From: Macrostomum lignano
Taxonomy: Eukaryota
NCBI GenBank assembly: GCA_002269645.1
Contig: NIVC01002605.1
Location: 62,001-126,000, forward strand
DNA length: 64,000 bases
Direction: 5' to 3'
Shown here piece after piece: positions 11,291-60,088 of this stretch (position 1 is the stretch's first letter; each line of letters opens with the position of its first letter). The notes beneath the pieces were generated by a model, which did no database searches, was not told where the DNA came from, and worked only from the letters and a program-made list of their open reading frames with translations. The translations under genes and the position numbers were made by a program.

Positions 11291-11366
11291 GACAACTTAT
11301 ATTATGCCACACTAAACGAAAACATGGCAAATTCATACCATTGTTTCATGTTTCAGGCTTCTTTGC

Positions 11367-40904: not shown

Positions 40905-41185
40905 CTTCAAATAATGATTGGAAAAGAAAAATGTGAAGGCAGGTTAAAAACGAATAGTCTAATATATAGATGCGGAGTTAATTCAGAGCAGCCTGTGTAC
41001 TAACCTGTGTACTAACCGCTGCCAAATCTGCTTACCTTTCAGTGGGTTAGACACCCTAAACTGGTTCTCATCAAACAATCTTTCTTTAAAAAAATTTCAA
41101 ATAAACAATACCAAATGACGCTTAGCGTTCTACTTACAACATAAATACAAGCATTTTAGATAGGCTTTCGATTGCGCCGACTCAC

Positions 41186-42244
41186 CTTAGCCAGCGCGTT
41201 GAGTCTCTGCGGCAGGTCCCGAGCCGAAGACCATTCTAAATAGAGTTCAGCCGTTGCTAAGCAACCAGAATCGGTTGGCAGAAGCCACAACGGCCCGGCC
41301 AGACTGAGGATTAGGCGGAGGCCGGCGTCGGCCAGGCAGGCGGTTGGGTCGGCCAGCAGCTCGGACAGTCGAATTGGCGGCGTCGGCGGTGGCGAGATGA
41401 CCGGACCAGTTGGTAGAGCCGACAGACTGCAACCGGCATCGACAATGGCGTCGATGGCGGCGCGCACCGCCCGAGCAGCGGCGTCGGAGAGTTGTCGATC
41501 GGCGTAGACGCCTTCCAGCACCAGACGAAGCAGCCGGTCGGCGGCCGCAGGGGCTTCTTCGCTGACAACGTCAGGAGCAAACAGTTTCCGACGCTTTGGC
41601 TTTCGACGAGTTTTCGACTTTACCGATGCGTCGACAGCGTCGGCGGCCCGTAGCAGCAGGCGACAAGCCGACAGCAGATCGGTGAGCGGCGGCGTCGGCG
41701 TTAAACTGCAGTGCAAGCGTAGCGCCAATTTTGTGGCCGAGCTCTGTCCGAGCCCGGACACCAGGTCGGCCGCTCCGTCCGGCGGCAGGGGATCGATCCA
41801 AATCTCGGCGCAGCGATTTCGCATGGCGCGCGACAGTTCGCCGAATTTCGGATCAGACGCCAGGAACAGGCGGAACTCCGGGTGCGGTGACACTTCGTCG
41901 CCGTCGCCGTCTATGTCGCCGCCGCGTTCGGTGAGGTACAGCCGACCGTCCGGCTCCAGCAGGGAGTTCAGCCGGTCCAGCACGGCAACTCCGCAGTGAT
42001 TTGCCGAGTCCAACAGCAGCCAGTCGCCTTCGCGAACAGCCCGAACTAATTGACTGTCGCGCCAGCGAAATCTGACAGAGGCGGCGCCGTTTGATGAAGC
42101 CGCCGTCGAGTCGGTCGACAGGCGGAGCTCGCGCCATTGTCGTGCGACAGTGTTCAGCCGGCCGCGCAACTCATCGGGACAGTGAGCCTCCAGCGCGGTC
42201 AGGAGCTCGCCGAGTAGTCTGGTCTGCTCAGATTCGTTAGCGAC
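41186..42244 (-). CDS. MDN1: Midasin exon (AAA D6, second half)
   Basis: FRWRDSQLVRAVREGDWLLLDSANHCGVAVLDRLNSLLEPDG...HPEFRLFL...ELSRAMRNR. Confidence 0.95.
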
Positions 42245-42379
42245 CTACAGGAGTGTAGGATAAGAATTGGCGAGCGCTGTTACTGTGGAGGCCATCCTGT
42301 TTGACTTAATGAGCTCGTAAAAAACGAGAACAAAAGTGAATTGGAAGTTTTGTGAAATCAGTTTTAAAGGCTTAGCAGA

Positions 42380-42389
42380 CAGACAAGAG

Positions 42390-42443
<54 letters not shown>

Positions 42444-42520
42444 AAAACAGACAAGAGGACAGACAGACAGAAACTAAGACAGACAGACACATAGACAGAC
42501 AGACAGGACAGACGGACAGA
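42380..42520. repeat. (GACA)n microsatellite
   Basis: Direct. Confidence 0.9.
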
Positions 42521-42542
42521 CAAACAATGTATCGCAGCTCAC

Positions 42543-43259
42543 CTGCTCAGTCTCAGCGTCTCCAAGCGCTTTGCGCGCCAACATCAGCGCTGTCTTGCCA
42601 GCAGAGTTGCGCGATTTACTCAACAACCGCGCCGCATCGCGCGCCAACGAGCGAGCCCGGCGCGCCAGCTGGCGCCCCTCCCTGCCCGGCTCGGTCTGCT
42701 CGTAGCCGCCAACCAGATCACCAGTGTCCATGCCGGCGCTAAGAGGCATGACGCGGAGCCGCCTGCCGCACAGGCCGGCCAGCAGGCGCACCAGTCGGGT
42801 TTTGCCGGCCGCCTCCGGCCCGATAAGCGAGGCCGGCCAGCCGAACCTGACGCAGTGCAGCAGCGACTCCAGGGCGCCAAGCTGGTGCCGAAGCAGGTAG
42901 GCTTCGTCGTTAGTTGTATCGCTGATTCTACTGACACTGTGTTGCCTAGCAACCCGTGCGGCGCCAACGGTCACGTGAGTATTAGTAACGTGAAGCATAG
43001 TCGGCCAAGGATAAACAGGATTAGCGGATTCGTCTGGGAAAACTTCCGTGTAGAGATCGGCCACTCGGCGGCGATCTTCTCGACAGCGCATCCGGCCGGA
43101 GTACACCAGGCGGAGGAACAGGCCCGGCTGGCAGCGTCGCCTACCCCCGTCGCCATGGAGACGTAGGGCTTCGCACCAGCGGAATACGTCGCGCAAATTG
43201 AATTCCCATGGCGAGCCGGCGAGGCCGAACGAACGGTCGACGGATACGCGCTGTTGAAG
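42543..43259 (-). CDS. MDN1: Midasin exon (D5 end, AAA D6 Walker A)
   Basis: GSPWEFNLRDVFRWC...LIGPEAAGKTRLV...DLVGGYEQ; joins exon 54980-55617 in phase across an 11.7-kb intron. Confidence 0.95.
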
Positions 43260-43344
43260 CTGCTCAAGAATGGAGTTGGTTGCTCTTAGTGTGTAAGTGC
43301 TTTACCTACTCATTTTACACAAGCAATATTCCCGCCTGGCCCAA

Positions 43345-43800
43345 ACACCCGGTTTTTGTCCGGATTTGGTCCGGAATTGTCCGGTTTTAGCGGTTTTTCC
43401 GGATCAAGCGAAATTTCATCCGGATTTTATCCGGTTGTACAGTCCGGATCAAAATTCGGAGGATCCTCCGGACCAAAACCGGATAAAAAGTTTTTTGCAA
43501 ACGTCTTTCGTCCGGTTTTTCACCCGGAAATTTATCCGGTCGATTTTCTAACAAAAATTGGACTAAACCCGGAGCATAATCCGGATGACCTCCGGACGAG
43601 AGTAGTTTTTTCGTCCGGAAATTGATCCGGTATTTCTTCCACTCGTTTCTCCACTGTTCGAGACGGATCTAACCGGATCAAATACCGGATTAAATCCCGC
43701 TGGGACGCAACGCCGACATTTTGCAAGCTGTTGGTTCGATTTCGGACCGAAATTAACACGAAATTTACTTTTGGTCCGACTTTTAACCCTTTAGGACACG
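43345..43800. repeat. Left subterminal repeat array ([a/t]tccgg[a/t] motifs)
   Basis: Dense tccgga/tccggt/ccggat motifs in both orientations. Confidence 0.85.
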
Positions 43801-44214
43801 ATTTTTGTCGTCCAGAAAGTCGTCTTGCTGTCTGAGATTTTCTGTACCGATTTTTGCACGACTGAAACCCGATTTTCAAACCTTTCATGAACAGCTGCAG
43901 TACGCCCTTCGCAAGTACCCGTATAAAACGGAATGGACACAAAAATGGCCGGCTGTAACCTGTTTTGTAACCGTCATGGTCACCTATTACCATATTTTGG
44001 GACTGTTTTGTTCTGCGTCACATTATTACCCTTCACAGTGACCACATTTAGACCATTTTGTTCAGGACCACAATGCTACCGTTCCGTAAATATCGTACAG
44101 TATTTCAGATGTAAGGTATGCTTTTTTACGAAGTGAGTAAGGAATATTATACATCAATTTCGTATTCCAGTTTATCACTACTCAATTTCGACAACCCCAC
44201 TCCTCAAAGCAGGC

Positions 44215-45225
44215 TGTCGCACAGGAGGCGGCGGCGCTTCTTCATTGGAGCTTCTTCAGTTGTATGGTCAAGTATAGCTTTCAATTTCGAAACGGCGTTG
44301 CCAAGGCGGCGGTGGCGGCTGCCGCACAGGTGGCGGCTGCCGCACAGGAGGCGGCGGCGCTTCTTCATTGGAGCTTCTTCAGTTGTATTGTCAAGTATAG
44401 CTTTCAATTTCGAAACGGCGTTGCCAAGGCGGCGGTGGCGGCTGCCGCACAGGTGGCGGCTGCCGCACAGGTGGCGGCTGCCGCACAGGTGGCGGCTGCC
44501 GCACAGGAGGCGGCGGCGCTTCTTCATTGGAGCTTCTTCAGTTGTATTGTCAAGTATAGCTTTCAATTTCGAAACGGCGTTGCCAAGGCGGCGGTGGCGG
44601 CTGCCGCACAGGTGGCGGCTGCCGCACAGGTGGCGGCTGCCGCACAGGTGGCGGCTGCCGCACAGGTGGCGGCTGCCGCACAGGTGGCGGCTGCCGCACA
44701 GGTGGCGGCTGCCGCACAGGTGGCGGCTGCCGCACAGGAGGCGGCGGCGCTTCTTCATTGGAGCTTCTTCAGTTGTATGGTCAAGTATAGCTTTCAATTT
44801 CGAAACGGCGTTGCCAAGGCGGCGGTGGCGGCTGCCGCACAGGTGGCGGCTGCCGCACAGGAGGCGGCGGCGCTTCTTCATTGGAGCTTCTTCAGTTGTA
44901 TTGTCAAGTATAGCTTTCAATTTCGAAACGGCGTTGCCAAGGCGGCGGTGGCGGCTGCCGCACAGGTGGCGGCTGCCGCACAGGAGGCGGCGGCGCTTCT
45001 TCATTGGAGCTTCTTCAGTTGTATTGTCAAGTATAGCTTTCAATTTCGAAACGGCGTTGCCAAGGCGGCGGTGGCGGCTGCCGCACAGGTGGCGGCTGCC
45101 GCACAGGTGGCGGCTGCCGCACAGGAGGCGGCGGCGCTTCTTCATTGGAGCTTCTTCAGTTGTATTGTCAAGTATAGCTTTCAATTTCGAAACGGCGTTG
45201 CCAAGGCGGCGGTGGCGGTGGCTGT
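44215..45225. repeat. Higher-order repeat: ~105-bp module plus variable 18-bp subunit (caggtggcggctgccgca)
   Basis: Seven modules; subunit runs of about 2,4,8,2,2,3; open frames on both strands. Confidence 0.93.
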
Positions 45226-45937
45226 CTCACAGCTGTCAAACAGGTAACCGTTTGAATTTTTTATAATGACTTATAACAAGTTTATTCATTCAACTGTACG
45301 GACTAGTTTCCTGTTACTACTTTTGAGCCTGAACAAAATGGTCACAGTTTACGGGTAACAATGTGACCCTGAACAGAACGTTCACAAAGCATGGTTACAG
45401 TTAACAGTAACATGTGACCCTATTGTCACGAATAAGAATTGTCACATTAAGCGGTCAGCAGCGTTACGGACACAAGTGAAACGGTCACAGACCCTTTTTG
45501 TCTTTTTGTCACCATGATGCGTTTTATGCGGTCATCATGGTTAACTTCGGTTAACTTTTTTGCAGTATTATATTATGTAGTACGTGTGCTGTATTATTAG
45601 TTTTAAAATACATCAGTAAAGACAGTTGTGATTGTGCACTATTCCGTTGACTTTAATTATTTATGTGGATTTATCAAACATACATGTAGGTGTAATTGTA
45701 GGAATGTTAAAACTTATGGCAGAAATTGTTGCTGAAAGTTATTATAAAAACTCCATCTCGATGGGGTGCTTTCGTAGAAATCAGGTGCTAGAAAAATCGT
45801 ACTCAAAGCGATTTAAAGTCGTGTATATACGAATTTATATGCTTAGGCATTAGTATATTTTTGCGTAGTACACTTCAACAACCACAAAAATTAAATGCAT
45901 AAATGCTAAAACCTGAATTTCCAGCCCATTCGGTGAT

Positions 45938-46172
45938 ATGGATGACGAGGAGAAATCAAAACAGGCGCGTCGCATTTACATGCGTCGGTACATGCTGAAG
46001 CGCAGAGCTGAGGCACGGGAGCAATCTCAATCAGCCCCCCTAACTGTCGCTTCCTCAAGCGGCAACTGTTCAACTGGCCTAGGAGCTGCTATCACTAGTG
46101 CGCCAAATGCAGTCCAAGGAGCTGCTAGCGATAGTGTGTCAACTGCCCAAGGAGTAGCTTGCGAGAAAGATG
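45938..46172 (+). CDS. CMC/EnSpm transposase, probable exon 1
   Basis: MDDEEKSKQARRIYMRRYMLKRR; phase-1 donor GATG|GTAGGC compatible with downstream exons. Confidence 0.6.
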
Positions 46173-46392
46173 GTAGGCTCTTAATTCTGTACTTGGGTAA
46201 TCTGCAGTTACTACACATTCAAGCTCATAATTATGCACGTTTGTTAGTATAGGTATAGTTGGAAAGTACACCCTATAGTCTATAGGTGTATACTGTATTT
46301 TTAGTTATGAAAGCTATAGGTCATTAGGAATTTGGATGACCATTGGAAATTTAACTTCGAAATTTGACGCTTATGTACCGCCTTCGATTCAG

Positions 46393-46470
46393 AGGACAAT
46401 ACTAGCGACAGCGACAGCTCCGTCGCTGGCTCCGATGTCTCTGAAGCGATGGACATCGCCGGAGATTCAG
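46393..46470 (+). CDS. CMC/EnSpm transposase, possible exon 2 (acidic, 78 nt)
   Basis: ttcag acceptor, CAG|GTGGAC donor, phase 1/1, reads EDNTSDSDSSVAGSDVSEAMDIAGDS. Confidence 0.5.
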
Positions 46471-46648
46471 GTGGACCTCTTCCAAGTACTCCTAGTACTT
46501 ACTCAGGTGACTCAGATAAGCAATTCAGTACATTGGAGTGCATTCAGATTTGTACGTATGCATGTAGCTATGGACAGCAAACAATGGACCACGCGGCTTG
46601 ATTTTGACAAAACAGCTATCGATAACTGCTATCAATTTCAATTTTTAG

Positions 46649-48984
46649 GTTCTGACGACGACAACATGCCGGATCCAGGAGAGCTTGAGCCTGAGCCTGA
46701 GCCTGAGCCCGACCCAAAGTTGCTCCAGCCATGGCACGAAGCGTTGCCTCCAACACTTGGTGAAGCGCTGTTGGAACTCGAGTCATTTGCTCAGGACGTC
46801 AAACTGTCCCGTGAAAGTGTTACACGGCTTCTAACGCTCTTTCATCGTCTGGCACCGGGTAATAGGCTGCCACGGACTGGGCGAGCGGCGCGCAACGCGC
46901 TCAAGTCTGTGCAGATGTCTACTGGCACGTCTAAATGTTGGACAGTGTGCAATGTCTGCTATAGGAATAGCCCTGGCCGAACGGAAGACAACAATGAAGC
47001 ATGTAGTCACTGCCAGTCACCTAAAGTGGCAAACTTTTGGGTCTTCGATGTTAAAAACCAGCTCGAGACCTTTGTGTCGGCCCGCAGGTTGCTAGATCTT
47101 ATCGTGTTCCCTGCAGACAAGCACGTGCCAAATGATGTGCTCCACGAGGCCAACAGTGAACTCTATCGGGACTATACAACGAGTATTGTGCCTGAAGATC
47201 GGAGTGACTTGGCCATAATGTTGTCCTTTGACGGCTTCGCTCTGTACTCGACGAGTCCCGTTGAAGTATGTCCTATCTATTTCTGCTTCCTAGAACTTCC
47301 TGAGCGGTACAAGCTCCGGTTTGTTGTGAAGGTGGGCGTCTGGGTCAGCAACCGGATCGTCAGAAAGGTGCACCCAGCTGCATTTTTACCAATCGTAATT
47401 GACGTTATTAACGAATTGCGATTCAACGGCATTGCTTTTGTGGATCGCCAAGGCATGCACCGCCGTTTGCGTCTACACGTCCTAATCGGCATGTTTGACG
47501 CACCTGCAAGAGCCGATGCGTTGGGACTCAAAAGGTTTTCGGCCGTGTTTGGGTGCGACAAGTGCTACTTGGAGACATCTCTGCACCCCTCGGGTCATGG
47601 CCGTGTGTACGGGCAAGCAGTCACCGCTGCAATGCAGAGGAACGCCAGAAAAAAGGGGTGTCTGCAGACGGTCGTCCGCACGATGACCGACACCGCCTCT
47701 ATTGTAAGCAGACTGCCAGTGCGTGTCGGGGTCGGATGGCACCCCCGAATAAACATTCTGGGTGTCCGTGCTCAGTCGCCACTGGCTCAACTATGCGGCT
47801 TTGATATCATGCGCGGCACTCCATCCTGTTATCTACACCAACTGTGCTCTGGCTTGGTAAAAAACATTCTCTTCCAACTCTTCCTAGACCGGCCAGACAA
47901 GCCCGACCGTGGCATAACCAACTGTCCGGACCTCAGCTCTCAGGCCACAATTGACAATGTGCAACTTGAGTTGCAGAAACTTCGGCTACCCAGTTGTGTT
48001 CAACGCCACACTATTCGTCCTCTAAGGGATTTGCGACACTTGCGCGGCCATGAGCTGGAGATCTGGTTGTTTGCCATTGTGCCGCTAGTATTGGAAGACT
48101 TTCTTCCCGCTGATCACTACCAGCAACTAATGGTGCTTTCATCGGCCTGTTTCTGGTTGACGCTGGAGGGCGCGCCTCTTAGTGAGCTGCGGCACGTCGA
48201 CATCTCGCTGCGGCAATTCCATGAGCATTTAGACCAGCTTTATTCCCTCAGAGCGTTGACATACAACGCACATCATGTATGCAGGCACATGGTCACTTCT
48301 GCTAAGTTGGCTGGGCCCGTACATAAACTATCTGCAGGTATATTCGAATCCATGCACACACGCCTGCGTGACCAGCTCCATGGAACGCGTCGGAACGATG
48401 TGGAGTTAGTAGGCGTTGTTGAGCGCGAGTTTGCCCAACTCCAAGCGCGAGTTCGACTGCAAGATGCCGTCCCAGGTGGCATGCCTGTACCGCATCCGGA
48501 TCGTCCGCGCACTGAATTGCTGAAGATTGACGGAGTTGTGCTTCGACGCCCTGTTGGTATGTTCGACGGCTGGCGCTCAGCGGTCCTGGCATCGGGAGCC
48601 ACAGTCGAGGTGTTCGTCCCGCCGGAAGCGAACAGAAAAGTGATTTCTAGTTTCGTAGCCATTACTGATGCATGTTCAAGTACGTCCTTCATTTTTGCTC
48701 GCGTCGCCGAACTTCATGCGCATGACAACAATGTGAGGGCGACGGTACACGTTCTACCAGTGCAGGAGCTCATTGATCCCCTACAAGCTTTGGCGGCTGT
48801 GCTCCCGACGTCTGAGAACCGCGGTTGTCGCTTCGCGCATGTTCGGCGACTCCTATCGGATCCGCTTGGTGATCCTGGAGACTGGCCGATCCTGGCTGTG
48901 CCGCTTTCTCGAGTCGTAGGCATGTGCGTTGTATATGACCAAAAGATCGCCTTGTTGCCGCACCCACAGTTTGGATTCAGCTGA
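46649..48984 (+). CDS. CMC/EnSpm (Transposase_21/DUF4218-like) transposase, main exon
   Basis: CNVC..CSHC zinc motif; IMLSFDG (D), GMFDAPARA (D), GCDKC, YLHQLCSGLVK, LRGHELEIW, YNAHHV, SAGIFES (E); uninterrupted ORF. Confidence 0.92.
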
Positions 48985-49715
48985 ATGAAATAACTCCTCT
49001 GTGAAGTATATGCACTTTATGTACCTTGTAATGCGAAGTATATAAACTACAATTATAATTGTATTACAATTTACAACTGTATTACAATTACATTACAATT
49101 ATACTTTAGTAACTACAATTCGTAACACAGCTACTGCTGCTACTACTACTAGCACATATCCTAGTAGCTTTGAACTACCTAGAACTACCTTTCAACTACC
49201 AGCTAGTATAGTAGAGTAATAGTCAGTACTATAGTCACTACTAACTTATTGCTAGTAGTAGTAATAATAGGAGCGTAGGGCACGGCGTATTGTGTTTGTG
49301 GTAGACCAAGCCTCTCGGTGTTTATTGAATCGAAAAATCGAATACAGTGTAACCAGTTATACATTGCGCCAGTCAGGAAACTGTTATCTGCAACGTTTAC
49401 CACTGTTTGTCTCTCGTTTACATTTATCGCAGCAGGTATATGTACGTTCTTTAAATAATTATACAAGACTCCGTGAAACAAATTTGAGAATGTAGTGCTT
49501 CATTAGTGATTACTGTCTCCGTTCTTGTTTGATCAAACGAAGCTGAAAATGCAGTTTTCACCCGTGAAATTTACCCGTTCGACGGTTGACTGACTACTTG
49601 ACTGACTTACTGACTGACTGGCTAACTGACTTACATATAATACTAGTTTATAAATACAATCTCAACTGCATACCTCACATTCAACACAAAACTTCACTTG
49701 CAGCTAACAACGCGC

Positions 49716-50531
49716 ATGGACTGGAGTAGACTATTGGATGACGAGCTACGTAAGCAACGCATTAATTGGCTGGGTTCGGACGCTAGCCACGACTCTGATG
49801 ACTTTGCTACGCCGGATGCAGAAGACCTCCGTGATGATGGCGCGCCAGATAGCCAGGATCCTGATGACTACGACACGCCAGATATGGAAGACCTCCGTGA
49901 TGATGGCGCGCCAGATAGCCAGGATCCTGATGACTACGACACGCCAGATATGGAAGACCTCCGTGATGATGGCGCGCCAGATAGCCAGGATCCTGATGAC
50001 TACGACACGCCAGATATGGAAGACCTCCGTGATGATGGCGCGCCAGATAGCCAGGATCCTGATGACTACGACACGCCAGATATGGAAGACCTCCGTGATG
50101 GTGCTGGTGCCGCGGATTCGTTCCCGGACGAAGTGGCCACTGTTCCTGAGCAGTTCAGTCCCCAAGTTGCCAGCACCGCTGCCGCGCACAGAGTGCCTTC
50201 TAAGCGTGCTAAGTACACCCTAGAAGATTACAACACGCTGCCGGATGCCGCTCCCGCCATGTACGGCAGCAGGAAACGGGAGGATCGGTTGCGGCTACCG
50301 GCACAGACTTGTACTGAGTGCGAGGGTTGGTACAACCAACTATCCCCGCAGTCCCGTGCGGCTCGGTTGCAGGCCAATGGGCGGCACCGGCATCGGCGCA
50401 TTATTCAGGCGCCAAATTTTTTTGCGATCGCAATGCCCCCCTCCCCACCAGAGGCTCCAATTGAATGCATGAAAGTGGGTAAACGTAGGCGGCGACCGCT
50501 TCGCGATTTGCGAAGCAACCCTTCAGTGTAA
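49716..50531 (+). CDS. Transposon-borne CtIP/Sae2(RBBP8)-like protein with 22-aa acidic repeats
   Basis: RKREDRLRLPAQTCTECEGWY...LQANGRHRHRRIIQAPNFFAIAMP aligns by eye with the CtIP C-terminal domain ([21 protein letters not shown]...[23 protein letters not shown]); four 66-bp repeats at ~49820-50095. Confidence 0.8.
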   Translation: MDWSRLLDDELRKQRINWLGSDASHDSDDFATPDAEDLRDDGAPDSQDPDDYDTPDMEDLRDDGAPDSQDPDDYDTPDMEDLRDDGAPDSQDPDDYDTPDMEDLRDDGAPDSQDPDDYDTPDMEDLRDGAGAADSFPDEVATVPEQFSPQVASTAAAHRVPSKRAKYTLEDYNTLPDAAPAMYGSRKREDRLRLPAQTCTECEGWYNQLSPQSRAARLQANGRHRHRRIIQAPNFFAIAMPPSPPEAPIECMKVGKRRRRPLRDLRSNPSV

Positions 50532-51371
50532 TGATACACAAGCACAAAGTTCATAATCTGTGTAGCGGCCGTTATATCGGAGTCACGGACAACAGAAGTA
50601 GTAGGACGCTACATTGCAAGGCTGGAGGCCGAGTTTCCAAGGATGCTGTTGTAAAATTGTCATTTTACCATCTCATCCGTGTATTTATATTCGACAGTCC
50701 CCCTCCAGCCTTGCAGTGTAGCATCCTACTACTTCTAATATCCGCGATAACCGTCTTCATTACTTCATAGAAGCGTATTAATAGTTTCTCTAATCATCTA
50801 TTTAACGTTACACTAAAGCTAGACGTTGCTTTGCAAATCCCATAAGACGTCAGATAAGAGGCTATGATCGATTCTGTCTTGAAACTTAGATGCGAAGCGA
50901 TGATGAAGCTATGAAGAAGCGAAGATGAAGCGAAGCATTGCTATTTGTTGTGTGTAGAATGATAACTACTTACCGGAACATCTTTTGACAAAGTTATCAT
51001 TAAAAGTTTTTACGAATGACAGCTGCCATATGCATGTCATGTCATGTCATGACAGTTTTGATGGAATTCGAAGAGTGTCTTCAATTTTTTCTTTAAAAGC
51101 TCATTTTCTGTAGTATGCTTGAACTCAGAATTTATTCTCTTTGAGTACGTCTTATCCATTGTTCAAGTACCCGCGCTATTCCGCTATTCACTTCTGCGCT
51201 TCGTCGCCCTCCTAGAATCACCTCTTAGAATCGCCCTCCTAGAATCACCTCTTAGAATCGCCCTCCTACTTCGTACTGTCACCGTTATAGTAATTGGGAA
51301 CGTATCCTCACCCCCACAGCCTTGGACGGCGACATCAACAGCAATCAGAACAGCAACAGAAATCAACAGCA

Positions 51372-52146
51372 ATGGCGACGAAAAGAAAAAAAGGAGAAGG
51401 AAAACCGGACGATAACAATAACGTCGATGCCGAAAACCAACCATCCGTTGTCCCTAAGGGAAGTTCGTCGAAAGTAGTCGGAAGCGCGGACGATCAGCAT
51501 CAAGTGGCGACGAAAAGGAAAAAAGGAGAAGGAAAACCGGACGATAACAATAACGTCGATGCCGAAAACCAACCATCCGTTGTCCCTAAGGGAAGTTCGT
51601 CGAAAGTAGTCGGAAGCGCGGACGACCAGCATCAAGTGGCGACGAAAAGGAAAAAAGGAGAAGGAAAACCGGACGATAACAATAACGTCGATGCCGAAAA
51701 CCAACCATCCGTTGTCCCTAAGGGAAGTTCGTCGAAAGTAGTCGGAAGCGCGGACGACCAGGAACAAATGACCTCGTTTAAGTCTGAAGTTACGGCTCGG
51801 TATTACGTTTTTCAATATTCGGAACATGACAACCGTACGGAGTCAGTTTGCACTGATGCAACTTGCACGAATTGCGCAATTATTGTTAGCCTTTGCAAGA
51901 CAACACCATTGCCACTAAATGTCGGCTCCGTAGTCGCAATCGTAACCGCTAAAACTAACAGACTCCGAGCTAAACGCTACACGGGGACCCTAATAAAGGG
52001 TCCCTTTGATAGCAAAGGGGAGGTGGCTGCCGCGGCCAGGCTGACGAACGTGTACGCACCGCCGGCAGAGCTGCCGCGAACATGCTCATCTTGCCGTGGA
52101 CTGTCACTTGAACTACAACGAGAAAAGAGTTTATCTGACACTCTAC
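51372..52146 (+). CDS. Transposon BEN-domain protein, exon 1 (three 44-aa repeats plus globular region)
   Basis: Open frame; 132-bp repeats; CTAC|GTAAGT phase-1 donor matches the next acceptor; true start may be further upstream. Confidence 0.7.
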
Positions 52147-52292
52147 GTAAGTGCTGTTTTTAGCCGCTTAATGTACTTAAGTTTGTCCCTAAAACTTTCA
52201 ATACGATGTACTTATTATTCTCAAATTACACAATTCAAATGAGGCGATTGCAACACGCCCTGCAACCATGTACATGTACATACCTATCGCAG

Positions 52293-53278
52293 GTTCCGAA
52301 CTCCGTGCTTCACAAGCCAAGCAGCAGAAGTTCGAAGATGAAATTCGCGAGCTGGGCCTAAAAATTACGGCCGGTCGTAAAACTGAAGCTTCATTGCTGA
52401 AACAGTTGGACCAAGAACACGGACGGTTTGTCTGTCTTCAGCGCAATGTTTCGACAGCCAACGCTCTAATAACGCGTGCGTCCAGCTGCTTGACTGGACT
52501 TGTCCAGGCACAATCAGCAGCTTCGGCTGATGCAGATCTGTCTGACCAATCACTGTCTGACGTGGCCGAAGGCGATGACGGCCGAGAATTTTGTGCGGAC
52601 TCGACTCTATCCGCAAAAGAGACACGAGCGCTGGTTTCAGCATGCGGATCTACGCCCGACACGCAACCGGGATCATCTATCTCAAGTCGTGTACCACTGT
52701 CAGAGAAGCAGCCTTTTTTACTTGTGACCGTTGGCCATAGGTCCGACCTAGACAGTCGGCACGAGGAGTATAAGGTAACGATGAGACACCCGGTAGACAT
52801 AGACGACGAGGACCACAAAAAAATTGAGGATAAGCGACGCTCAGCGCGATTAACGCTGATGAGGGCTCTATTCAGAAGCATATTCACGGACGAGGAACTA
52901 GCCTCGTCCAGTCTGTCCGGCCGACGGATTGCAGGCTACAGGTCAGGAGCTGCAAACCCTGGAAAATTGGCCGCAGCCAAAATGTGGCTGGCGAATGCAT
53001 CTGTCGTTTACACTCCAGCCGAACTCCACCGAGCGTTCACCCGTTGCGGTGAAACAGCTCGCGAGAAGCTGGGGTACCCGAAGCGTGTCAGAACCAAGCC
53101 GGGTGCCACCAAACCGGGAACCACCATGCCGGCTGCCACCAAGCCGGGTACCAACAAGCCGTCCACCACCCAGCCGTCCACCACACAGCCGTCCGACTCT
53201 GGCGTACTCGGACATGTTGTCGACATATCGGAGCTGGACGGGAGTGACGACATGCTGAACCTAATAGTTCGCAATTAG
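52293..53278 (+). CDS. Transposon BEN-domain protein, exon 2 (coiled coil plus BEN domain)
   Basis: atcgcag acceptor; coiled-coil heptads; LMRALFRSIFTDEELASSSLSGRR...KLAAAKMWL...ELHRAFTRC is BEN-like. Confidence 0.78.
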
Positions 53279-53929
53279 TAACAGAAGAATTTTAAGTTCG
53301 ACTGTTATGAAACTTCTGTCCGTTTTGGCTGAAATAGGTTGGAGCAAGTTTTCATAGGAATGCAGCAGTGTTACTCAGTAAAATAATTGCCATCACTGCA
53401 ATCGATGACCCTCTGCCAACGAGAGGGCAAACTTTGGATGCCAGCTGGCATCCAACACAGCTTCATTATCCTCTGCATAGAAAAGTATAAAAACGGACAG
53501 AACTTTCCTAACAACCCAATAACTAAAAAATAAAATTTTGTGGTCCCCTTTGGTGTCCGAGGTAGAGCCCTTAATCTGTAGTTAGTCTATATGGTGCTTA
53601 ATATATTTCTTAATCTGTGGTGGAGCCCCCAATGTCTACTGTTATAGCGATCCATGGTGGTTTGTCCTGTGACGGAGGGTGACAGTAAGGAATGTGATCG
53701 AGTAGAGGGGAGGTGGGAGATTAGAGGGATGGTGACAGTAGAGAGACTGAGAGAGTAGAGGGTGAGATGGTTTAGGTGCTTGAGAGAGTAGACGATGGTG
53801 ACATTGTAGGTGGTGACGTGAGAGGGAACTGGCACTGGCCCTCTGTAAATCACTGATGTCTATTTGAATTTGAAAAAAATATACGGAATGTATTGATGGA
53901 GTGCAAGGAATGGAAGTATTTCGCCAGGC

Positions 53930-54385
53930 GTGAATTTTTAAGCCGGAATAACTGCTCCAGACTGTGTTACGTGTTTCCCATTTTTTCTTCTCTTAGTAAT
54001 CAAATTTATGCTGCCAAATCTATCTCCGCGTCAATCGAGATCCGGCTTTTTATCCGGAAATTCACCCGGCGTTTCATCCACTAAGGAACCCAGTCGCGTT
54101 GGTCCGGTTTTTATCCGGAAATTCACCCGGTATTTCATCCTGCACTGCTGATCCGGATTTGATCCGGTTTGTCGTCCGCATTTACATCCGCTAAAAACCG
54201 GAGGGAAACCGGAGATTCTTCCGGATAAACCCCCGGATGTAGACCCGGATGAAAGTACTCAAAATTCACACTCTCATCCGGAATGTTAACAATTTCTCCG
54301 GCTTTCGTCCGGTATTTTAAATGGGAATTTTATATTACGAGCCGGATGAAAATTCGGAATTGTGCCCGGAGAAATTGCCGGATGA
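53930..54385. repeat. Right subterminal repeat array (tccgg motifs)
   Basis: Dense atccgg/ccggat motifs next to the right TIR. Confidence 0.85.
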
Positions 54386-54429
54386 TTGGGCCAGGCGGGT
54401 TGGGAGCCACGGAAGGAACTCACAACAGA

Positions 54430-54900
54430 TCGACCCACTTAAGGACCACTTTAGCTTGACCCACTCATCAAGGACCACTTTAGCTTGACCCACTCATCAA
54501 GGACCACTTTAGCTTGACCCACTCATCAAGGACCACTATAGCTTGACCCACTCATCAAGGACCACTATAGCTTGACCCACTCATCAAGGACCACTATAGC
54601 TTGACCCACTCATCAAGGACCACTATAGCTTGACCCAGTAATCAAAGACAACTATAGCTTTTTGATCCACTTAAGGACCACTTTAGCTTGACCACTCATC
54701 AATGACTTGACCACTCAAGGACTAAGTCAAGGACTAAGTAGGTCAAGCTAAAGTGGTCCTTGAGTGAGTCAAAAAGCTATAGTTGTTTTTGATAGCTTGA
54801 CCACTCAAGGGCCATTATAGCTTGAGCTTACGCATCAATCAAGGACTACTATAGCTTGACCCAATCAAGGACCAGTAAAGCTTGACTCCACTTAAAAACT
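54430..54900. repeat. Intronic minisatellite, ~30 bp (cttgacccactcatcaaggaccact[t/a]tag) with an internal inverted copy
   Basis: ~7 good copies, then degenerate and inverted copies. Confidence 0.85.
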
Positions 54901-54979
54901 CGCTTAAGGACAACTAGCTAGACTGACTAAATTCAGAAGCAGAAGGATAAAGCACAAAAACTGAGTCAACTCAGCTCAC

Positions 54980-55617
54980 CAAACAGTTGAATCGAATCAT
55001 GCTCTCTAATGTGTCAGACGGCAGCGGCAGTTCGGCGTAGACAGCGCCCGCCACGGTCAGCTGATCGGCCGGGGTCAGCGGGGTCAGGTGCACCTGTACA
55101 AACCGATTGACAAAGGAGCGCGGCAGGCACTTCCTACCGCCGCCCTCCCTAGCCGGATTCTGGCAGGCAAAGATGCGAGTCCGGCCCGACTGTACAGTAA
55201 ATGCCCGATTCAATTCCGGAACGAATATTTCTCCGCGGTGATCTAGGCAAGAGTTCAGGCCTTCCAGCACCGATTGGCTGGCCAGGTTCATCTCGTCTAG
55301 CACAACCCAATGGCCCAGCTGCAGAGCTCGCAGCAGCGGCCCGCTATGCCAGGCAAACCCTAATTCACCCTCTTTCGGCAAGTCGCTGCCAAACAGGTCG
55401 GCAACGTCGGTGTGCTCGGACAGGTTGATTCGAACGAGTCGATGGCCGCTAGCCTTGGCCAGAGCGGCCACTAGGCTGGTCTTGCCGACTCCGGGCGAGC
55501 CTTCCAGCAGCACAGGCCGGCTGCCGGGCAGTTGAAGGGCTCGCAATAGTCGACGACAATTGGCGTTGGGGGTGGGCGCCGACAGGCTGAAGTCCGGCGT
55601 CGGCTGGGGATTCTGGC
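54980..55617 (-). CDS. MDN1: Midasin exon (AAA D5)
   Basis: PVLLEGSPGVGKTSL...HWVVLDEMNLASQSVLEGLNSCLDHRG...NPAREGGGRKCLPRSFVNRF. Confidence 0.97.
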
Positions 55618-55639
55618 CTGCGCATGAGGATAACATTTT

Positions 55640-58560
55640 CGTTCGATTTTGATGCGATTCTGAGGTGATTTTGATGCGATTCTGGGGTGATTTTGATGTG
55701 ATTCTGAGGTGATTTTGATGCGATTCTGAGGTGATTTTGATGTGATTCTGAGGTGATTTTGATGCGATTCTGAGGTGATTTTGATGTGATTCTGAGGTGA
55801 TTTTGATGCGATTCTGAGGTGATTTTGATGTGATTCTGAGGTGATTTTGATGCGAATCTGAGGTGATTTTGATGTGATTCTGAGGTGATTTTGATGTGAT
55901 TCTGAGGTGATTTTGATGTGATTCTGAGGTGATTTTGATGCGATTCTGAGGTGATTTTGATGTGATTCTGAGGTGATTTTGATGTGATTCTGAGGTGATT
56001 TTGATGCGATTCTGAGGTGATTTTGATGCGATTCTGAGGTGATTTTGATGTAATTCTGGAGTGATTTTGATGTGATTCTGGGGTGATTTTGATGTGACTC
56101 TGGGGTGATTTTGATGTGATTCTGGAGTGATTTTGATGTGACTCTGGGGTGATTTTATCCGATTTTGGGGTGATTTTTATGTGATTTTGAGGTGGTTTTG
56201 ATGTGATTCTGGGGTGATTTTGATGTGACTCTGGGGTGATTTTGATGTAATTCTGGAGTGATTTCGATGTAATTCTGAAGTTATTTTGATGTGACTCTGG
56301 GGTGATTTTGATGTGATTCTGGAGTGATTTTGATGTGACTCTGGGGTGATTTTATCCGATTTTGGGGTGATTTTTATGTGATTTTGAGGTGGTTTTGATG
56401 TGATTCTGGGTGATTTTGATGTGACTCTGGGGTGATTTTGATGTAATTCTGGAGTGATTTTGATGTAATTCTGGAGTGATTTCGATGTAATTCTGGAGTG
56501 ATTTTGATGTGACTCCGGGGTGATTTTGATGTGATTCTGGAGTGATTTTGATGCGATTCTGAGGTGACTTTGAGGTGATTCTGGGGTGATTTTGATGCGA
56601 TTCTGAGGTGATTCTGAGGTGATTCTGGGGTGATTTTGATGTGATTCTGGAGTGATTTTGATGTGATTCTGGAGTGATTTTGATGCGATTCTGGGGTGAT
56701 TTTGATGTAATTCTGGAGTGATTTTGATGTGATTCTGGGGTGATTTTGATGTGACTCTGGGGTGATTTTATCCGATTTTGGGGTGATTTTTATGTGATTT
56801 TGAGGTGGTTTTGATGTGATTCTGGGGTGATTTTGATGTGACTCTGGGGTGATTTTGATGTAATTCTGGAGTGATTTTGATGTAATTCTGGAGTGATTTC
56901 GATGTAATTCTGAAGTTATTTTGATGTGACTCCGGGGTGATTTTGATGTGATTCTGGAGTGATTTTGATGCGATTCTGAGGTGACTTTGAGGTGATTCTG
57001 AGGTGATTCTGGGGTGATTTTGATGTGATTCTGGAGTGATTTTGATGTGATTCTGGAGTGATTTTGATGCGATTCTGGAGTGATTTTGATGTGACTCTGG
57101 GGTGATTTTGATGTGATTCTGGAGTGATTTTGATGTGACTCTGGGGTGATTTTATCCGATTTTGGGGTGATTTTTATGTGATTTTGAGGTGGTTTTGATG
57201 TGACTCTGGGGTGATTTTGATGTAACTCTGGGGTGATTTTGATGTAATTCTGGAGTGATTTCGATGTAATTCTGAAGTTATTTTGATGTGACTCTGGGGT
57301 GATTTTGATGTGATTCTGGAGTGATTTTGATGTGACTCTGGGGTGATTTTATCCGATTTTGGGGTGATTTTTATGTGATTTTGAGGTGGTTTTGATGTGA
57401 TTCTGGGGTGATTTTGATGTGACTCTGGGGTGATTTTGATGTAATTCTGGAGTGATTTTGATGTAATTCTGGAGTGATTTCGATGTAATTCTGAAGTTAT
57501 TTTGATGTGACTCCGGGGTGATTTTGATGTGATTCTGGAGTGATTTTGATGCGATTCTGAGGTGACTTTGAGGTGATTCTGGGGTGATTTTGATGCGATT
57601 CTGAGGTGATTCTGAGGTGATTCTGGGGTGATTTTGATGTGATCCTGGAGTGATTTTGATGTGATTCTGGAGTGATTTTGATGTGATTCTGGAGTGATTT
57701 TGATGCGATTCTGGGGTGATTTTGATGTAATTCTGGAGTGATTTTGATGTGATTCTGGGGTGATTTTGATGTGACTCTGGGGTGATTTTATCCGATTTTG
57801 GGGTGATTTTTATGTGATTTTGAGGTGGTTTTGATGTAATTCTGGGGTGATTTTGATGTGACTCTGGGGTGATTTTGATGTAATTCTGGAGTCATTTCGA
57901 TGTAATTCTGAATTTATTTTGATGTGACTCTGGGATGATTTTGATGTGATTCTGGGGTGATTTTGATGTGACTCTGGGGTGATTTTATCCGATTTTGGGG
58001 TGATTTTTATGTGATTTTGAGGTGGTTTTGATGTGATTCTGGGGTGATTTTGATGTGACTCTGGGGTGATTTTGATGTAATTCTGGAGTGATTTTGATGT
58101 AATTCTGGAGTGATTTCGATGTAATTCTGAAGTTATTTTGATGTGACTCCGGGGTGATTTTGATGTGATTCTGGAGTGATTTTGATGCGATTCTGGAGTG
58201 ATTTTGATGTGACTCTGGGGTGATTTTGATGTGATTCTGGAGTGATTTTGATGTGACTCTGGGGTGATTTTATCCGATTTTGGGGTGATTTTTATGTGAT
58301 TTTGAGGTGGTTTTGATGTGACTCTGGGGTGATTTTGATGTAATTCTGGAGTGATTTTGATGTAATTCTGGAGTGATTTCGATGTAATTCTGAAGTTATT
58401 TTGATGTGACTCTGGGGTGGTTTTGATGTGATTCTGGAGTGATTTTGATGCGATTCTGGAGTGATTTTGATGTGACTCTGGGGTGATTTTGATGTGATTC
58501 TGGAGTGATTTTGATGCGATTCTGTAGTGATTTTGATGTAATTCTGGATTGATTTCGATG
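55640..58560. repeat. Intronic satellite, 22 bp (gtgattttgatgtgattctggg) with higher-order blocks
   Basis: ~2.9 kb of tandem copies. Confidence 0.97.
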
Positions 58561-58644
58561 TGATCCTGGGTTGAGGTGGGTGGGGTGTCCCGGGTGATAC
58601 TCGAATCACAGTGCAAGTGCCATCTGTGGTACGCATTCTCTCAC

Positions 58645-58857
58645 CCATATCAATAAAAAATGGCTCAATGCCAAACTGCCGCTCCTCAACAGAGACAGTC
58701 AGTGGCAGCACGGAGCCAGGCTTGGCTGACTCAACAAACGGTCGGACAATTTTAGCCTCAAACGATTTGGCAGTGTACAGGCCGGCAGAGAGGCAGCAGG
58801 AGCGGAGCTGGGCGACCGCCTCAGAGAGCAGCCTGGTGGTCACTGACTGGTCAGCGG
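58645..58857 (-). CDS. MDN1: Midasin exon (D4-D5 connector)
   Basis: ...RQFGIEPFFIDM (FGI-PFFI is typical of midasin); phase 1/1. Confidence 0.85.
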
Positions 58858-59059
58858 CTGGCAGGTTTAATAGAAATATAATGATTAGGGCGGCTATAGG
58901 ATGTAAGTAGACATCCTTTTACAGAACCTCTAAACCTTTCAAGTTCATATCTTCTATACATAGCGACTTTTCAAAGCTAGCATATTCTTCACTTTATTGC
59001 AAGTACGCCATTTTAAAAAGCACAATACACCTGCATTAAAAGTGAAGTGTCATTTCTAT

Positions 59060-60050: not shown

Positions 60051-60088
60051 AAACTGTAAAGTGCTGATTCACATACGACAACACTCAC

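What the first reader, a model, noticed from the sequence alone, without database searches (positions are those of the whole stretch)
49716..50531. A DNA transposon carrying its own mini-CtIP/Sae2 (DNA end-resection, hairpin-processing cofactor)
Seen: between the transposase and BEN genes, inside the TIRs, a 271-aa ORF ends in RKREDRLRL-xxx-TCTEC-xx-WY...RHR...PNFF-x-I-x-MP. This is collinear with the conserved CtIP/Ctp1/Sae2 C-terminal domain (CxxC, RHR, P-x-F-W-x-x-x-F-P), and the ORF has a short N-terminal amphipathic helix (MDWSRLLDDELR). Known: CtIP/Sae2 activates MRE11-RAD50 to resect blocked and hairpin-capped breaks and favours homologous recombination. CACTA-type excision is thought to leave hairpin-capped donor ends. 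Inference: the element may steer repair of its own excision break, for example by restoring the donor copy from the sister chromatid so that copy number rises, or by blocking resection. I know of no described transposon-borne CtIP homolog.
Basis: partly seen in the sequence, partly recalled or inferred. Interest (0 to 1): 0.92.

Follow-up and report, generated by a model that had tools for sequence, protein, structure and literature searches.

The report
Transposon-borne mini-CtIP gene in a flatworm
An 11-kb cut-and-paste DNA transposon in a Macrostomum flatworm genome carries an intact, long-conserved copy of the business end of CtIP/Sae2, the host protein that switches on MRE11 nuclease at broken DNA ends, which suggests the element influences how its own breaks are repaired.

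Summary
Window 49716-50531 (+) is an intact 271-codon ORF. Its last ~105 residues are a complete CtIP/Sae2/Ctp1 C-terminal domain, with RKREDR, CxxC, RHR, PNFF..MPP and KRRRRPL in the family order.

Pfam SAE2 alone is sub-threshold (15.4 bits against a cutoff of 19.8). An exhaustive HMMER search of 1.84 billion proteins settles homology. The best hit is Macrostomum lignano Mlig004387 (E=1.4e-24), followed by SAE2-domain proteins at 6.5e-11 and 4e-4.

Mlig004387 is the host's own CtIP. It has an N-terminal coiled coil, is multi-exon, and lies at two syntenic loci between ordinary genes. The window ORF is therefore a paralogue (56% identity), not the host gene.

Synonymous sites are saturated (pS 0.72) while dN is only 0.45. 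The ORF's branch (dN 0.25) is about as slow as the host's (0.19), so it has been under purifying selection.

The ORF lies inside a TIR-bounded, Mirage-like (CMC) element (43331-54399) inserted antisense in a midasin intron. A second element copy exists elsewhere in M. lignano.

The ORF lacks the tetramerisation coiled coil. In its place is a perfect 4.2x acidic repeat.

Function (activating or blocking MRN at element-made breaks) is inferred. Conservation of the ORF across element copies could not be tested.

The parts
43331..43352 (+). Left terminal inverted repeat (CCCGCCTGGCCCAAACACCCGG)
   Evidence: It pairs with 54378-54399: 22 nt, 91% complementary (I12). The terminal 14-mer occurs exactly twice in the window, at these two sites in inverted orientation. 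Both flanks carry TT, a possible 2-bp target-site duplication.
43353..43700 (.). Left subterminal region dense in TCCGG/CCGGA motifs (probable transposase-binding repeats)
   Evidence: There are 17 and 13 motifs in the 500-bp bins at 43001-44000, against a window mean of 1.3. Sequence read.
44212..45218 (.). Internal tandem array (123-bp units holding 18-bp sub-repeats), flanked by a 23-nt inverted repeat (44051-44073 / 45321-45343)
   Evidence: tandem array, I14 (flanking inverted repeat).
45938..46252 (+). 104-aa ORF with a basic N-terminus, possibly a 5' exon of the transposase gene
   Evidence: No Pfam match. Its role was not established.
46336..48984 (+). Transposase ORF, 882 aa, Mirage-like (CMC superfamily)
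   Evidence: Pfam DUF1258 E=8e-7 (29.3 bits, below the cutoff of 33.1) and DUF4218 E=0.005. DUF1258 corresponds to the Mirage transposases and is close to CACTA Transposase_21 (PMC3985635). 81-89% identical to pieces of a M. lignano gene model at another locus.
49649..49654 (+). TATAAA, 67 nt upstream of the mini-CtIP ATG. An AG acceptor-like site (ttcacttgcag) ends at 49703.
   Evidence: These are sequence motifs only. No expression data were available.
49716..50531 (+). Mini-CtIP ORF, 271 aa, single exon
49716..49772 (+). Short N-terminal helix (MDWSRLLDDELRKQRINWL)
   Evidence: AF2 single-sequence model gives helix 3-19, pLDDT ~73. It aligns weakly with the end of the coiled coil of the small CtIP P0004 (pairwise E=0.002 without composition correction).
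49821..50100 (+). Perfect 66-bp tandem repeat x4.2, encoding 22-aa acidic units (EDLRDDGAPDSQDPDDYDTPDM), each with one SQ and one TP
   Evidence: 100% matches. (44% acidic; SQ at aa 46, 68, 90, 112; TP at aa 32, 54, 76, 98, 120).
50202..50501 (+). CtIP/Sae2/Ctp1 C-terminal domain (KYTLEDYN ... RKREDR ... CTEC ... RHR ... PNFFAIAMPP ... KRRRRPL)
   Evidence: With the family alignment, AF2 gives pLDDT 83-94 over the CxxC-to-RHR core.
51294..52163 (+). ORF of 289 aa (first ATG at 51372) with a 132-bp repeat x2.9, lysine-rich, function unknown
   Evidence: Only sub-threshold Pfam matches.
52268..53278 (+). ORF of 336 aa, coiled-coil-like N-terminus, very weak BEN-domain match. It is linked to the transposase in a second M. 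lignano locus.
   Evidence: BEN E=0.17, the only hit. P0001 aa 654-810 maps here.
54030..54377 (.). Right subterminal region dense in TCCGG/CCGGA motifs
   Evidence: 22 motifs in the bin 54001-54500. Sequence read.
54378..54399 (-). Right terminal inverted repeat
   Evidence: (I12).
54971..55636 (-). Host midasin (MDN1) exon on the right flank. With the exon at 42477-43196 (-), it shows the element sits antisense in a midasin intron.
   Evidence: AAA_5 E=2.4e-19. Midasin AAA lid plus AAA_5 in 42477-43196, and further midasin exons at 41159-42169 and 60072-60644.

Best explanation
An ~11.07-kb Mirage-like (CMC superfamily) cut-and-paste transposon lies at window 43331-54399, in a Macrostomum flatworm genome, antisense in an intron of the host midasin gene. 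It carries five same-strand ORFs.

One of them (49716-50531) is an old paralogue of the host's own CtIP gene. It keeps the whole C-terminal CtIP/Sae2/Ctp1 domain, which in CtIP, Sae2 and Ctp1 turns on the MRE11 endonuclease of MRE11-RAD50-NBS1. It has lost the N-terminal coiled coil that tetramerises CtIP and bridges DNA. In its place are a 17-residue helix and four perfect acidic 22-aa repeats rich in SQ and TP sites.

Shown here: the homology, the position inside the element, the existence of a separate host gene, and long-term purifying selection on the ORF.

Inferred mechanism: the element expresses this mini-CtIP together with its transposase. The mini-CtIP docks on host MRE11-RAD50(-NBS1) through the conserved C-terminal module and changes how the element's own double-strand breaks are processed.

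My preferred version is that it acts as a local MRN activator. It would promote clipping of transposase-blocked or hairpin-capped donor ends and resection, so that the emptied donor site is repaired from the sister chromatid or homologue and the element copy is restored, giving a net gain in copy number.

The nearly equally plausible opposite version is that, being unable to tetramerise, it competes with host CtIP. That would damp resection and protect the excised element ends or favour end joining.
For: Homology
- phmmer hits at E=1.4e-24, 6.5e-11 and 4e-4 to CtIP-family proteins in a library of 1.84e9 proteins.
- Pfam SAE2 is above threshold in the hits P0004 and P0006.
- 15 of 16 profile hits carry PF08573.
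- Five collinear motif blocks are present, including the extreme C-terminal RRRxP[LF].

Separate host gene
-.

Placement relative to the host gene
- The ORF is sister to the M. lignano host CtIP in an NJ tree.
- It shares lineage-specific features with the host gene: KYTL-DYN-LP, QAPNFFAI-MPP, CMK-GKRR-RPLR.

Selection
- pS 0.72 (saturated) and pN 0.34, so dN/dS is about 0.19.
- The dN branch is 0.25 for the ORF and 0.19 for the host.
- The relative-rate test gives 12 vs 7 changes, not significant.
- 11 of 12 family-invariant residues are kept, against 39 of 83 variable positions that match the host.

Inside a mobile element
- Perfect 14-bp termini occur only at the two ends.
- Subterminal motif clusters sit at both ends.
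- The transposase is Mirage-like.
- The transposase and ORF 52268 are linked again at a different M. lignano locus.
- Midasin exons lie on both flanks.

Literature
- The C-terminal region of CtIP is the part required to promote MRN (PMC7261161).
Against: - Only one copy of the ORF could be examined. The related M. lignano gene model (P0001) skips from the transposase N-terminus to ORF 52268 and holds no CtIP-like segment. The ORF is therefore not shown to be a standard part of the family.
- No annotated protein in 15 billion resembles it more closely than the host gene does.
- There is no expression evidence.
- The residue aligned with the key CDK site (human T847) is Ala. This is also true of the host gene.
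- The human C-terminal fragment alone (790-897) did not support single-strand annealing in cells (PMC7261161). This argues against a stand-alone activator and favours the competitor version.
- The purifying selection could partly date from a time before capture.
- The hairpin chemistry of CMC transposases is not established.
Confidence: 0.55

Rival explanations
1. Dominant-negative or decoy version. The mini-CtIP binds MRN through its C-terminal domain. Because it lacks the tetramerisation domain, it blocks host CtIP. That would suppress resection and shield the excised transposon ends, or push the donor break into end joining.
For: - No coiled coil: AF2 predicts only a 17-residue helix, and no N-terminal CtIP-type match was found.
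- The human CtIP C-terminal fragment alone gave no SSA, and oligomerisation is reported as essential (PMC7261161).
- The C-terminal domain is conserved.
Against: - From my own knowledge, not tested here: monomeric C-terminal fragments of Sae2 and a C-terminal Ctp1 peptide have been reported to stimulate the MRX/MRN endonuclease in vitro.
- The acidic SQ/TP repeats might supply another recruitment mode.
- There are no direct data either way.
Confidence: 0.25
2. Passenger capture. The ORF is a transduplicated piece of a CtIP gene, of the kind DNA transposons often pick up. It would have no role in transposition. Any effect would be incidental, for example small RNAs against the host CtIP.
For: - Only the part matching the last host exon is clearly homologous (host aa 362-463, all within exon L001 12467-13069).
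- The N-terminal half is a very young perfect tandem repeat.
- The ORF was not seen in the second element copy.
- Own knowledge: capture of host gene fragments by CACTA and Mutator elements is common.
Against: - A neutral passenger would not stay open and keep 11 of 12 invariant residues while synonymous sites saturate.
- Its dN branch is no longer than the host's.
- At 57% nucleotide identity to the host gene, RNA-level regulation of the host gene is implausible.
Confidence: 0.12
3. Not an element gene at all. It would be a stand-alone host paralogue, or an assembly chimera, that merely lies between transposon-derived sequences.
For: Only one locus was examined. The exact genome assembly of the window is not in the searchable collections.
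Against: - The ORF lies between the transposase and ORF 52268, which travel together at another locus.
- It is on the same strand as all the element ORFs and inside a matched TIR pair with symmetrical subterminal repeats.
- The whole unit interrupts a midasin intron on the opposite strand.
Confidence: 0.06

Closest known systems
CtIP/RBBP8 - Sae2 - Ctp1 - COM1 family (Pfam PF08573 SAE2 C-terminal domain); nearest member Macrostomum lignano Mlig004387 (PAA54340.1 / PAA88737.1)
   Same: The complete C-terminal domain is present, with the same order of motifs: R[KR][KR][DE][ED]R, CxxC, RHR, P-x-x-F-[WF]...P, and RRRxP[LF]. It is 56% identical to the host protein over ~100 aa and 31-38% identical to other family members.
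   Different: - There is no N-terminal tetramerisation coiled coil and no long internal region.
- The N-terminal half is a perfect acidic 22-aa repeat.
- The gene is a single exon encoded inside a transposon rather than at the host locus.
- Pfam SAE2 scores below its gathering threshold.
- The FW motif reads FF, and the T847-equivalent residue is Ala. Both are also true of the Macrostomum host gene.
CMC (CACTA / Mirage / Chapaev) DNA transposons, Mirage group (Pfam DUF1258)
   Same: - An 882-aa transposase whose best Pfam matches are DUF1258 and DUF4218 (PMC3985635).
- TIRs, subterminal repeat arrays, several same-strand ORFs and internal tandem arrays.
- A likely 2-bp target-site duplication (own knowledge: Mirage makes 2-bp duplications).
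   Different: - The termini are CCCGCC..., not CACTA.
- The Pfam matches are sub-threshold.
- The element carries a CtIP-derived gene, for which I found no precedent in the searched literature.
Host-gene capture by DNA transposons (own knowledge: Pack-MULEs, CACTA transduplicates, RPA-like genes in Helitrons)
   Same: A host-derived coding segment sits between the ends of a DNA transposon. As with the Helitron RPA-like genes, the captured gene belongs to DNA metabolism.
   Different: Most transduplicates are short-lived fragments. This one shows long-term purifying selection. It also retains a whole functional module of a double-strand-break repair regulator.

Membership tests
CtIP/Sae2/Ctp1 (PF08573 SAE2 C-terminal domain) | Match to the curated Pfam SAE2 model at or above its gathering score | tested here: not met
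   SAE2 is the only family hit, but it scores 15.4 bits (E=0.04) against a cutoff of 19.8, and covers only profile positions 7-39 of 110. The full-length ORF gives no hit. The undoubted host homologue P0002 also fails the cutoff (14.3 bits), so the model is insensitive for this lineage.
CtIP/Sae2/Ctp1 (PF08573 SAE2 C-terminal domain) | Statistically significant sequence homology to bona fide family members | tested here: met
   - E=6.5e-11 to P0004 (SAE2 37.6 bits plus an N-terminal coiled coil).
- E=4e-4 to the hagfish CtIP fragment P0006 (SAE2 49.1 bits).
- E=1.4e-24 to the M. lignano homologue, all in a library of 1.84e9 proteins.
- The profile search returned 15 of 16 hits carrying PF08573.
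CtIP/Sae2/Ctp1 (PF08573 SAE2 C-terminal domain) | Conserved CxxC, RHR and P-x-x-F-W motifs in collinear order | tested here: met
   CTEC at aa 199-202, RHR at aa 223-225, and PNFF..MPP at aa 233-242. The W is replaced by F, as in the Macrostomum host gene.
CtIP/Sae2/Ctp1 (PF08573 SAE2 C-terminal domain) | CDK phosphorylation site equivalent to human T847 / yeast S267 | tested here: inconclusive
   The aligned residue is Ala (QAPNFF) in both the ORF and the host protein. An S-P site follows at aa 243 (PPSPP; the host has PPTP). Phosphorylation cannot be tested here.
CtIP/Sae2/Ctp1 (PF08573 SAE2 C-terminal domain) | N-terminal coiled-coil oligomerisation (tetramerisation) domain | tested here: not met
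   Only a helix at residues 3-19 is predicted. tblastn with the N-termini of P0008 and P0004 finds nothing in the element. The host P0008 and the small CtIP P0004 do have the coiled coil.
CtIP/Sae2/Ctp1 (PF08573 SAE2 C-terminal domain) | Stimulates the MRE11 endonuclease within MRN/MRX | not testable with these tools
   This needs biochemistry.
CMC superfamily DNA transposon (Mirage group) | DDE transposase related to DUF1258 / Transposase_21 | tested here: inconclusive
   DUF1258 E=8e-7, 29.3 bits (cutoff 33.1); DUF4218 E=0.005. These are the only matches and both are CMC-associated, but both are sub-threshold. The catalytic residues were not mapped.
CMC superfamily DNA transposon (Mirage group) | Terminal inverted repeats with subterminal repeats | tested here: met
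   The termini match 14/14 (20/22 over the full TIR), and the 14-mer is found only at 43331 (+) and 54399 (-). TCCGG clusters sit at both ends.
CMC superfamily DNA transposon (Mirage group) | CACTA terminal sequence (CACTA branch only) | tested here: not met
   The termini read CCCGCCTGG. The element should not be called CACTA-type.
CMC superfamily DNA transposon (Mirage group) | 2-3 bp target-site duplication | tested here: inconclusive
   TT lies on both flanks. A 2-bp match has a 1 in 16 chance expectation, and no empty site was available.
CMC superfamily DNA transposon (Mirage group) | Multiple dispersed copies | tested here: inconclusive
   One further copy is inferred from the M. lignano gene model P0001. 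Its element-derived parts map to the window while its flanks do not.

The most novel reading that the evidence does not exclude
A cut-and-paste transposon has recruited, and kept for a long time, a stripped-down CtIP that plugs into the host MRE11-RAD50-NBS1 machine. This would let the element decide the repair pathway of its own excision break, with homologous repair restoring the donor copy so that a 'cut-and-paste' element in effect replicates. That would be a new class of transposon accessory gene: a mimic of a repair-pathway-choice factor. It would also be a natural minimal CtIP.
Probability: 0.3. Interest if true: 0.9.

Novelty: new variant of a known kind. Interest (0 to 1): 0.74.

Why it matters
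How cut-and-paste transposons raise their copy number depends on how the donor break is repaired. Until now that choice has been treated as the host's.

An element-encoded, selectively maintained CtIP module would be direct evidence that a eukaryotic DNA transposon manipulates the resection step that commits a break to homologous recombination.

It would also supply a naturally minimised CtIP: about 105 aa of conserved domain plus a phospho-acidic repeat. That is useful for dissecting what the C-terminal domain does without tetramerisation, and possibly as a tool to bias repair in genome editing.

Macrostomum lignano is an established laboratory model (own knowledge: RNAi and transgenesis are available), so the idea can be tested.

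Tried and rejected
- Pfam on the full ORF gave no SAE2 hit. Only the isolated core gives a sub-threshold hit.
- PDB sequence searches with the ORF and with the family profile found nothing relevant, and Foldseek against PDB gave 0 hits. No solved structure of this domain seems to exist, so a structural test is not possible. AF2 gives only moderate confidence.
- The word-index protein search with the C-terminus found nothing. This reflects its limited sensitivity, since the exhaustive search then found the relatives.
- The attempts to find further element copies or element-borne CtIP genes all failed:
  - No paralogue within the window.
  - The exact ORF and transposase sequences are not in the 15-billion-protein collection.
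  - The P0001 contig is not on record.
- Literature searches for a transposon-borne CtIP/Sae2 and for hairpin formation by CACTA/CMC transposases found no relevant paper.
- The TCCGG motif cluster at 3390-3880 looked like a third element end but is an unrelated minisatellite.
- I rejected 'sole host CtIP mis-assembled into the element' and 'recent capture of the host exon': nucleotide identity is 57% and synonymous sites are saturated.
- The species could not be fixed beyond Macrostomum.
Full report
**1. The observation**

Window 49716-50531 (+) is an open reading frame of 271 codons, from ATG to TAA. The mechanical ORF list starts it at a TTG six codons upstream.

It has three parts:
- Residues 1-19 (MDWSRLLDDELRKQRINWL) are predicted as a lone helix. 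Single-sequence AF2 gives pLDDT ~73, with everything else disordered.
- Residues ~36-128 come from a perfect 66-bp tandem repeat, 4.2 copies with 100% matches, at 49821-50100. It encodes an acidic 22-aa unit, EDLRDDGAPDSQDPDDYDTPDM. The region is 44% Asp/Glu, and each unit has one SQ and one TP.
- Residues ~163-262 hold, in order, KYTLEDYN, RKREDRLRL, CTEC, GRHRHR, APNFFAIAMPP and KRRRRPL.

**2. Is it a CtIP/Sae2 domain?**

The curated Pfam model alone does not decide this.
- With the whole ORF there is no SAE2 hit.
- With the 70-aa core, SAE2 (PF08573) is the only family reported, but at 15.4 bits and E=0.04, below the gathering score of 19.8.
I treated that only as a lead.

The decisive test was an exhaustive phmmer search of the last 126 residues against 1.84 billion representative proteins. 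It gave six hits at E<=0.001.
- Two are repeat or composition artefacts (P0003, P0005).
- P0002: E=1.4e-24, 55% identity.
- P0004: E=6.5e-11. This 315-aa protein from a metagenome has an N-terminal coiled coil and a Pfam SAE2 domain at 37.6 bits.
- P0006: E=4e-4. This hagfish CtIP fragment has SAE2 at 49.1 bits, and UniRef names it 'DNA endonuclease activator Ctp1 C-terminal domain-containing protein'.
- P0007: a 92-aa fragment.

A profile built from these five sequences then retrieved 16 proteins, 15 of them annotated PF08573, with E down to 5.5e-25.

The alignment is collinear from the RKKDER block to the extreme C-terminal RRRxP[LF] block. Homology to the CtIP/Sae2/Ctp1 C-terminal domain is therefore established.

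No solved structure of this domain exists to compare with. With the family alignment, AF2 predicts a small folded core from the CxxC to the RHR motif at pLDDT 83-94.

**3. The host has its own CtIP, and this ORF is not it**

P0002 is Macrostomum lignano PAA54340.1 (BOX15_Mlig004387g2). Its cluster mate P0008 (PAA88737.1, g1, 481 aa, partial) adds an N-terminal coiled coil.

Both lie in the M. lignano assembly GCA_002269645.1, at two syntenic loci between an acetyl-CoA synthetase gene and an EMP24/GP25L gene. Both are multi-exon, with the whole SAE2 domain in the last exon. That is an ordinary host CtIP.

The window ORF is its closest relative among all proteins searched and its sister in a neighbour-joining tree. 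The two share lineage-specific features: KYTL-DYN-LP, QAPNFFAI-MPP and CMK-GKRR-RPLR. They are nevertheless only 56% identical in protein and 57% in DNA.

By contrast, the transposase next to the ORF is 81-89% identical to M. lignano sequence. The ORF is therefore a diverged paralogue of the macrostomid CtIP, not its orthologue. It is also not a recent copy of the host exon.

The window most likely comes from M. lignano or a close relative. I could not fix the species.

**4. It has been kept by selection**

- Against the host gene, Nei-Gojobori counts over 110 codons give pS=0.72 (saturated, dS about 2.3) and pN=0.34 (dN=0.45). That makes dN/dS about 0.19.
- With P0004 as outgroup, the nonsynonymous branch leading to the window ORF is 0.25 and that leading to the host gene is 0.19.
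- A Tajima-type count gives 12 versus 7 lineage-specific changes, which is not significant.
- A lineage evolving neutrally for a time that saturates synonymous sites would have accumulated far more than 0.25 replacements per site, and would also carry stop codons and frameshifts. It has none.
- It keeps 11 of the 12 positions invariant in the rest of the family. The single change is D to E. At variable positions it matches the host at only 39 of 83. That contrast overstates the case somewhat, because invariant positions can only change in this lineage.

Together these show purifying selection on the domain over most of the time since the split. What they cannot show is where the gene resided during that time.

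**5. It is inside a transposon**

- The 14-mer CCCGCCTGGCCCAA occurs exactly twice in the 64 kb, at 43331 (+) and at 54399 (-). Over the full arms the match is 20/22.
- Just inside both ends are dense arrays of TCCGG/CCGGA motifs, 13-22 per 500 bp against a window mean of 1.3.
- Both flanks read TT, a possible 2-bp duplication.
- Between the ends all five long ORFs are on the + strand: a 104-aa ORF, an 882-aa ORF, the mini-CtIP, a 289-aa repeat-bearing ORF, and a 336-aa ORF.
- The only Pfam matches of the 882-aa ORF are DUF1258 (E=8e-7) and DUF4218 (E=0.005). DUF1258 corresponds to the Mirage transposases and groups with the CACTA Transposase_21 family (PMC3985635). This is a Mirage-like CMC element, but its termini are not CACTA.
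- The 336-aa ORF has only a very weak BEN match (E=0.17).
- The M. lignano gene model P0001 joins a piece of this transposase (81-89% identity) to a piece of the 336-aa ORF, while its own flanks do not map to the window. The two therefore travel together at a second locus, and the mini-CtIP lies between them here.
- The whole 11.07-kb unit interrupts the host midasin gene, which runs on the minus strand. Midasin exons lie at 54971-55636 on one side and at 42477-43196 and 41159-42169 on the other.

**6. What could not be shown**

I could not see any other copy of the mini-CtIP.
- P0001 holds no CtIP-like segment. It may be a deleted copy, or the gene model may splice across that region.
- The exact proteins are not in the 15-billion collection.
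- Two metagenome scans found nothing.

Whether the ORF is a regular gene of this transposon family or private to a sub-lineage is therefore open.

There are no expression data. There is only a TATAAA 67 nt upstream of the ATG and an acceptor-like AG at 49703.

**7. Mechanism**

Established knowledge, as summarised in PMC7261161:
- The C-terminal region of CtIP/Sae2 is the part required to promote the MRE11 endonuclease within MRN/MRX.
- The N-terminal domain mediates tetramerisation and is needed in cells.
- The human C-terminal fragment 790-897 alone gave no single-strand annealing.

The element's protein has the first module and lacks the second. I therefore infer that it binds the host MRE11-RAD50(-NBS1) complex and modulates processing of the breaks the transposase makes.

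- My preferred version (about 0.3 on its own) is local activation. MRN would clip blocked or capped donor ends and begin resection, so the gap is repaired from the sister or homologue and the element is restored.
- The opposite version (about 0.25) is a decoy that blocks host CtIP.
- A functionless passenger (about 0.12) fits poorly with the selection evidence.
From my own knowledge, hairpin intermediates are demonstrated for hAT and Transib/RAG transposases, not for CMC.

**8. Novelty**

Three literature searches found no report of a transposon-encoded CtIP/Sae2 homologue.

Capture of host genes by DNA transposons is known. A long-maintained, truncated double-strand-break resection cofactor inside a Mirage-like element is not. 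I file it as a new variant of a known kind. It is a true homologue of the CtIP C-terminal domain, but not a canonical CtIP, because the defining N-terminal oligomerisation domain is absent.

**9. Verdict**

The interpretation 'a DNA transposon carrying its own mini-CtIP' is supported. The function is inferred only. Interest is high, tempered by the single copy and the lack of expression or copy-level data.

Noticed in passing
window 41159-60644 (minus strand), probably much of 24-61 kb: The host gene around the element is midasin (MDN1). AAA_5, midasin-lid and MDN1_4th domains are found in exons at 60072-60644, 54971-55636, 42477-43196 and 41159-42169. The 11-kb element fills most of one intron, in antisense orientation.
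   Followed up: partly
L002 (Logan SRR31628425, 910-bp contig), 6-470 and 518-901: An FHA-like ORF (Pfam FHA E=0.001) lies directly upstream of a SAE2-like ORF (P0007). The reading frame has a TGA exactly where the family has the W of the FW motif, and then continues to a KRRRIPL tail. This could be a pseudogene, a sequencing error, or a TGA=Trp or read-through organism. The organism is unknown.
   Followed up: partly
window 50583-50640 / 50690-50747: A 58-nt inverted repeat (81% complementary, 49-nt spacer) begins 52 nt after the mini-CtIP stop codon. It may be a small MITE or a 3' hairpin.
   Followed up: no
window 44051-45343: A 1-kb tandem array (123-bp units with 18-bp GGTGGCGGCTGCCGCACA sub-repeats) is bracketed by a 23-nt inverted repeat (44051-44073 / 45321-45343). 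It may be a nested insertion inside the element's left arm. It creates long spurious ORFs in several frames.
   Followed up: no
window 51294-52163: This element ORF has a near-perfect 132-bp repeat x2.9, encoding KRKKGEGKPDDNNNVDAENQPSVVPKGSSSKVVGSADDQ units. It has no credible family match. Like the mini-CtIP, it carries a very young in-frame tandem expansion.
   Followed up: partly
window 54441-54886: A 29-bp tandem repeat (about 9 copies), with an inverted copy at 54737-54793, lies immediately outside the right end of the element.
   Followed up: no
window 3390-3880: A 20-bp minisatellite (GGGGCAAGAGTCCGGGGGAG-like) produces a TCCGG motif cluster and long ORFs on both strands. It is unrelated to the element ends.
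   Followed up: yes
window 8001-12000 and 56001-58000: These regions have extreme GC skew (-0.61/-0.48 and +0.64) and long overlapping ORFs in several frames (8442-11401). They are probably strand-asymmetric satellite or low-complexity DNA.
   Followed up: no
window 1638-2660 (-): A 341-aa ORF with a SKICH domain (E=4e-12), presumably an exon of another host gene.
   Followed up: no
window 49716-49900 vs P0004 aa 41-90: The mini-CtIP N-terminus and first repeat align weakly and collinearly with the end of the coiled coil and a PD[DE]YD[TV]P motif of the small metagenomic CtIP P0004. The pairwise E is 0.002 without composition correction. This hints that the whole ORF, not only the C-terminal domain, descends from a small CtIP.
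   Followed up: partly
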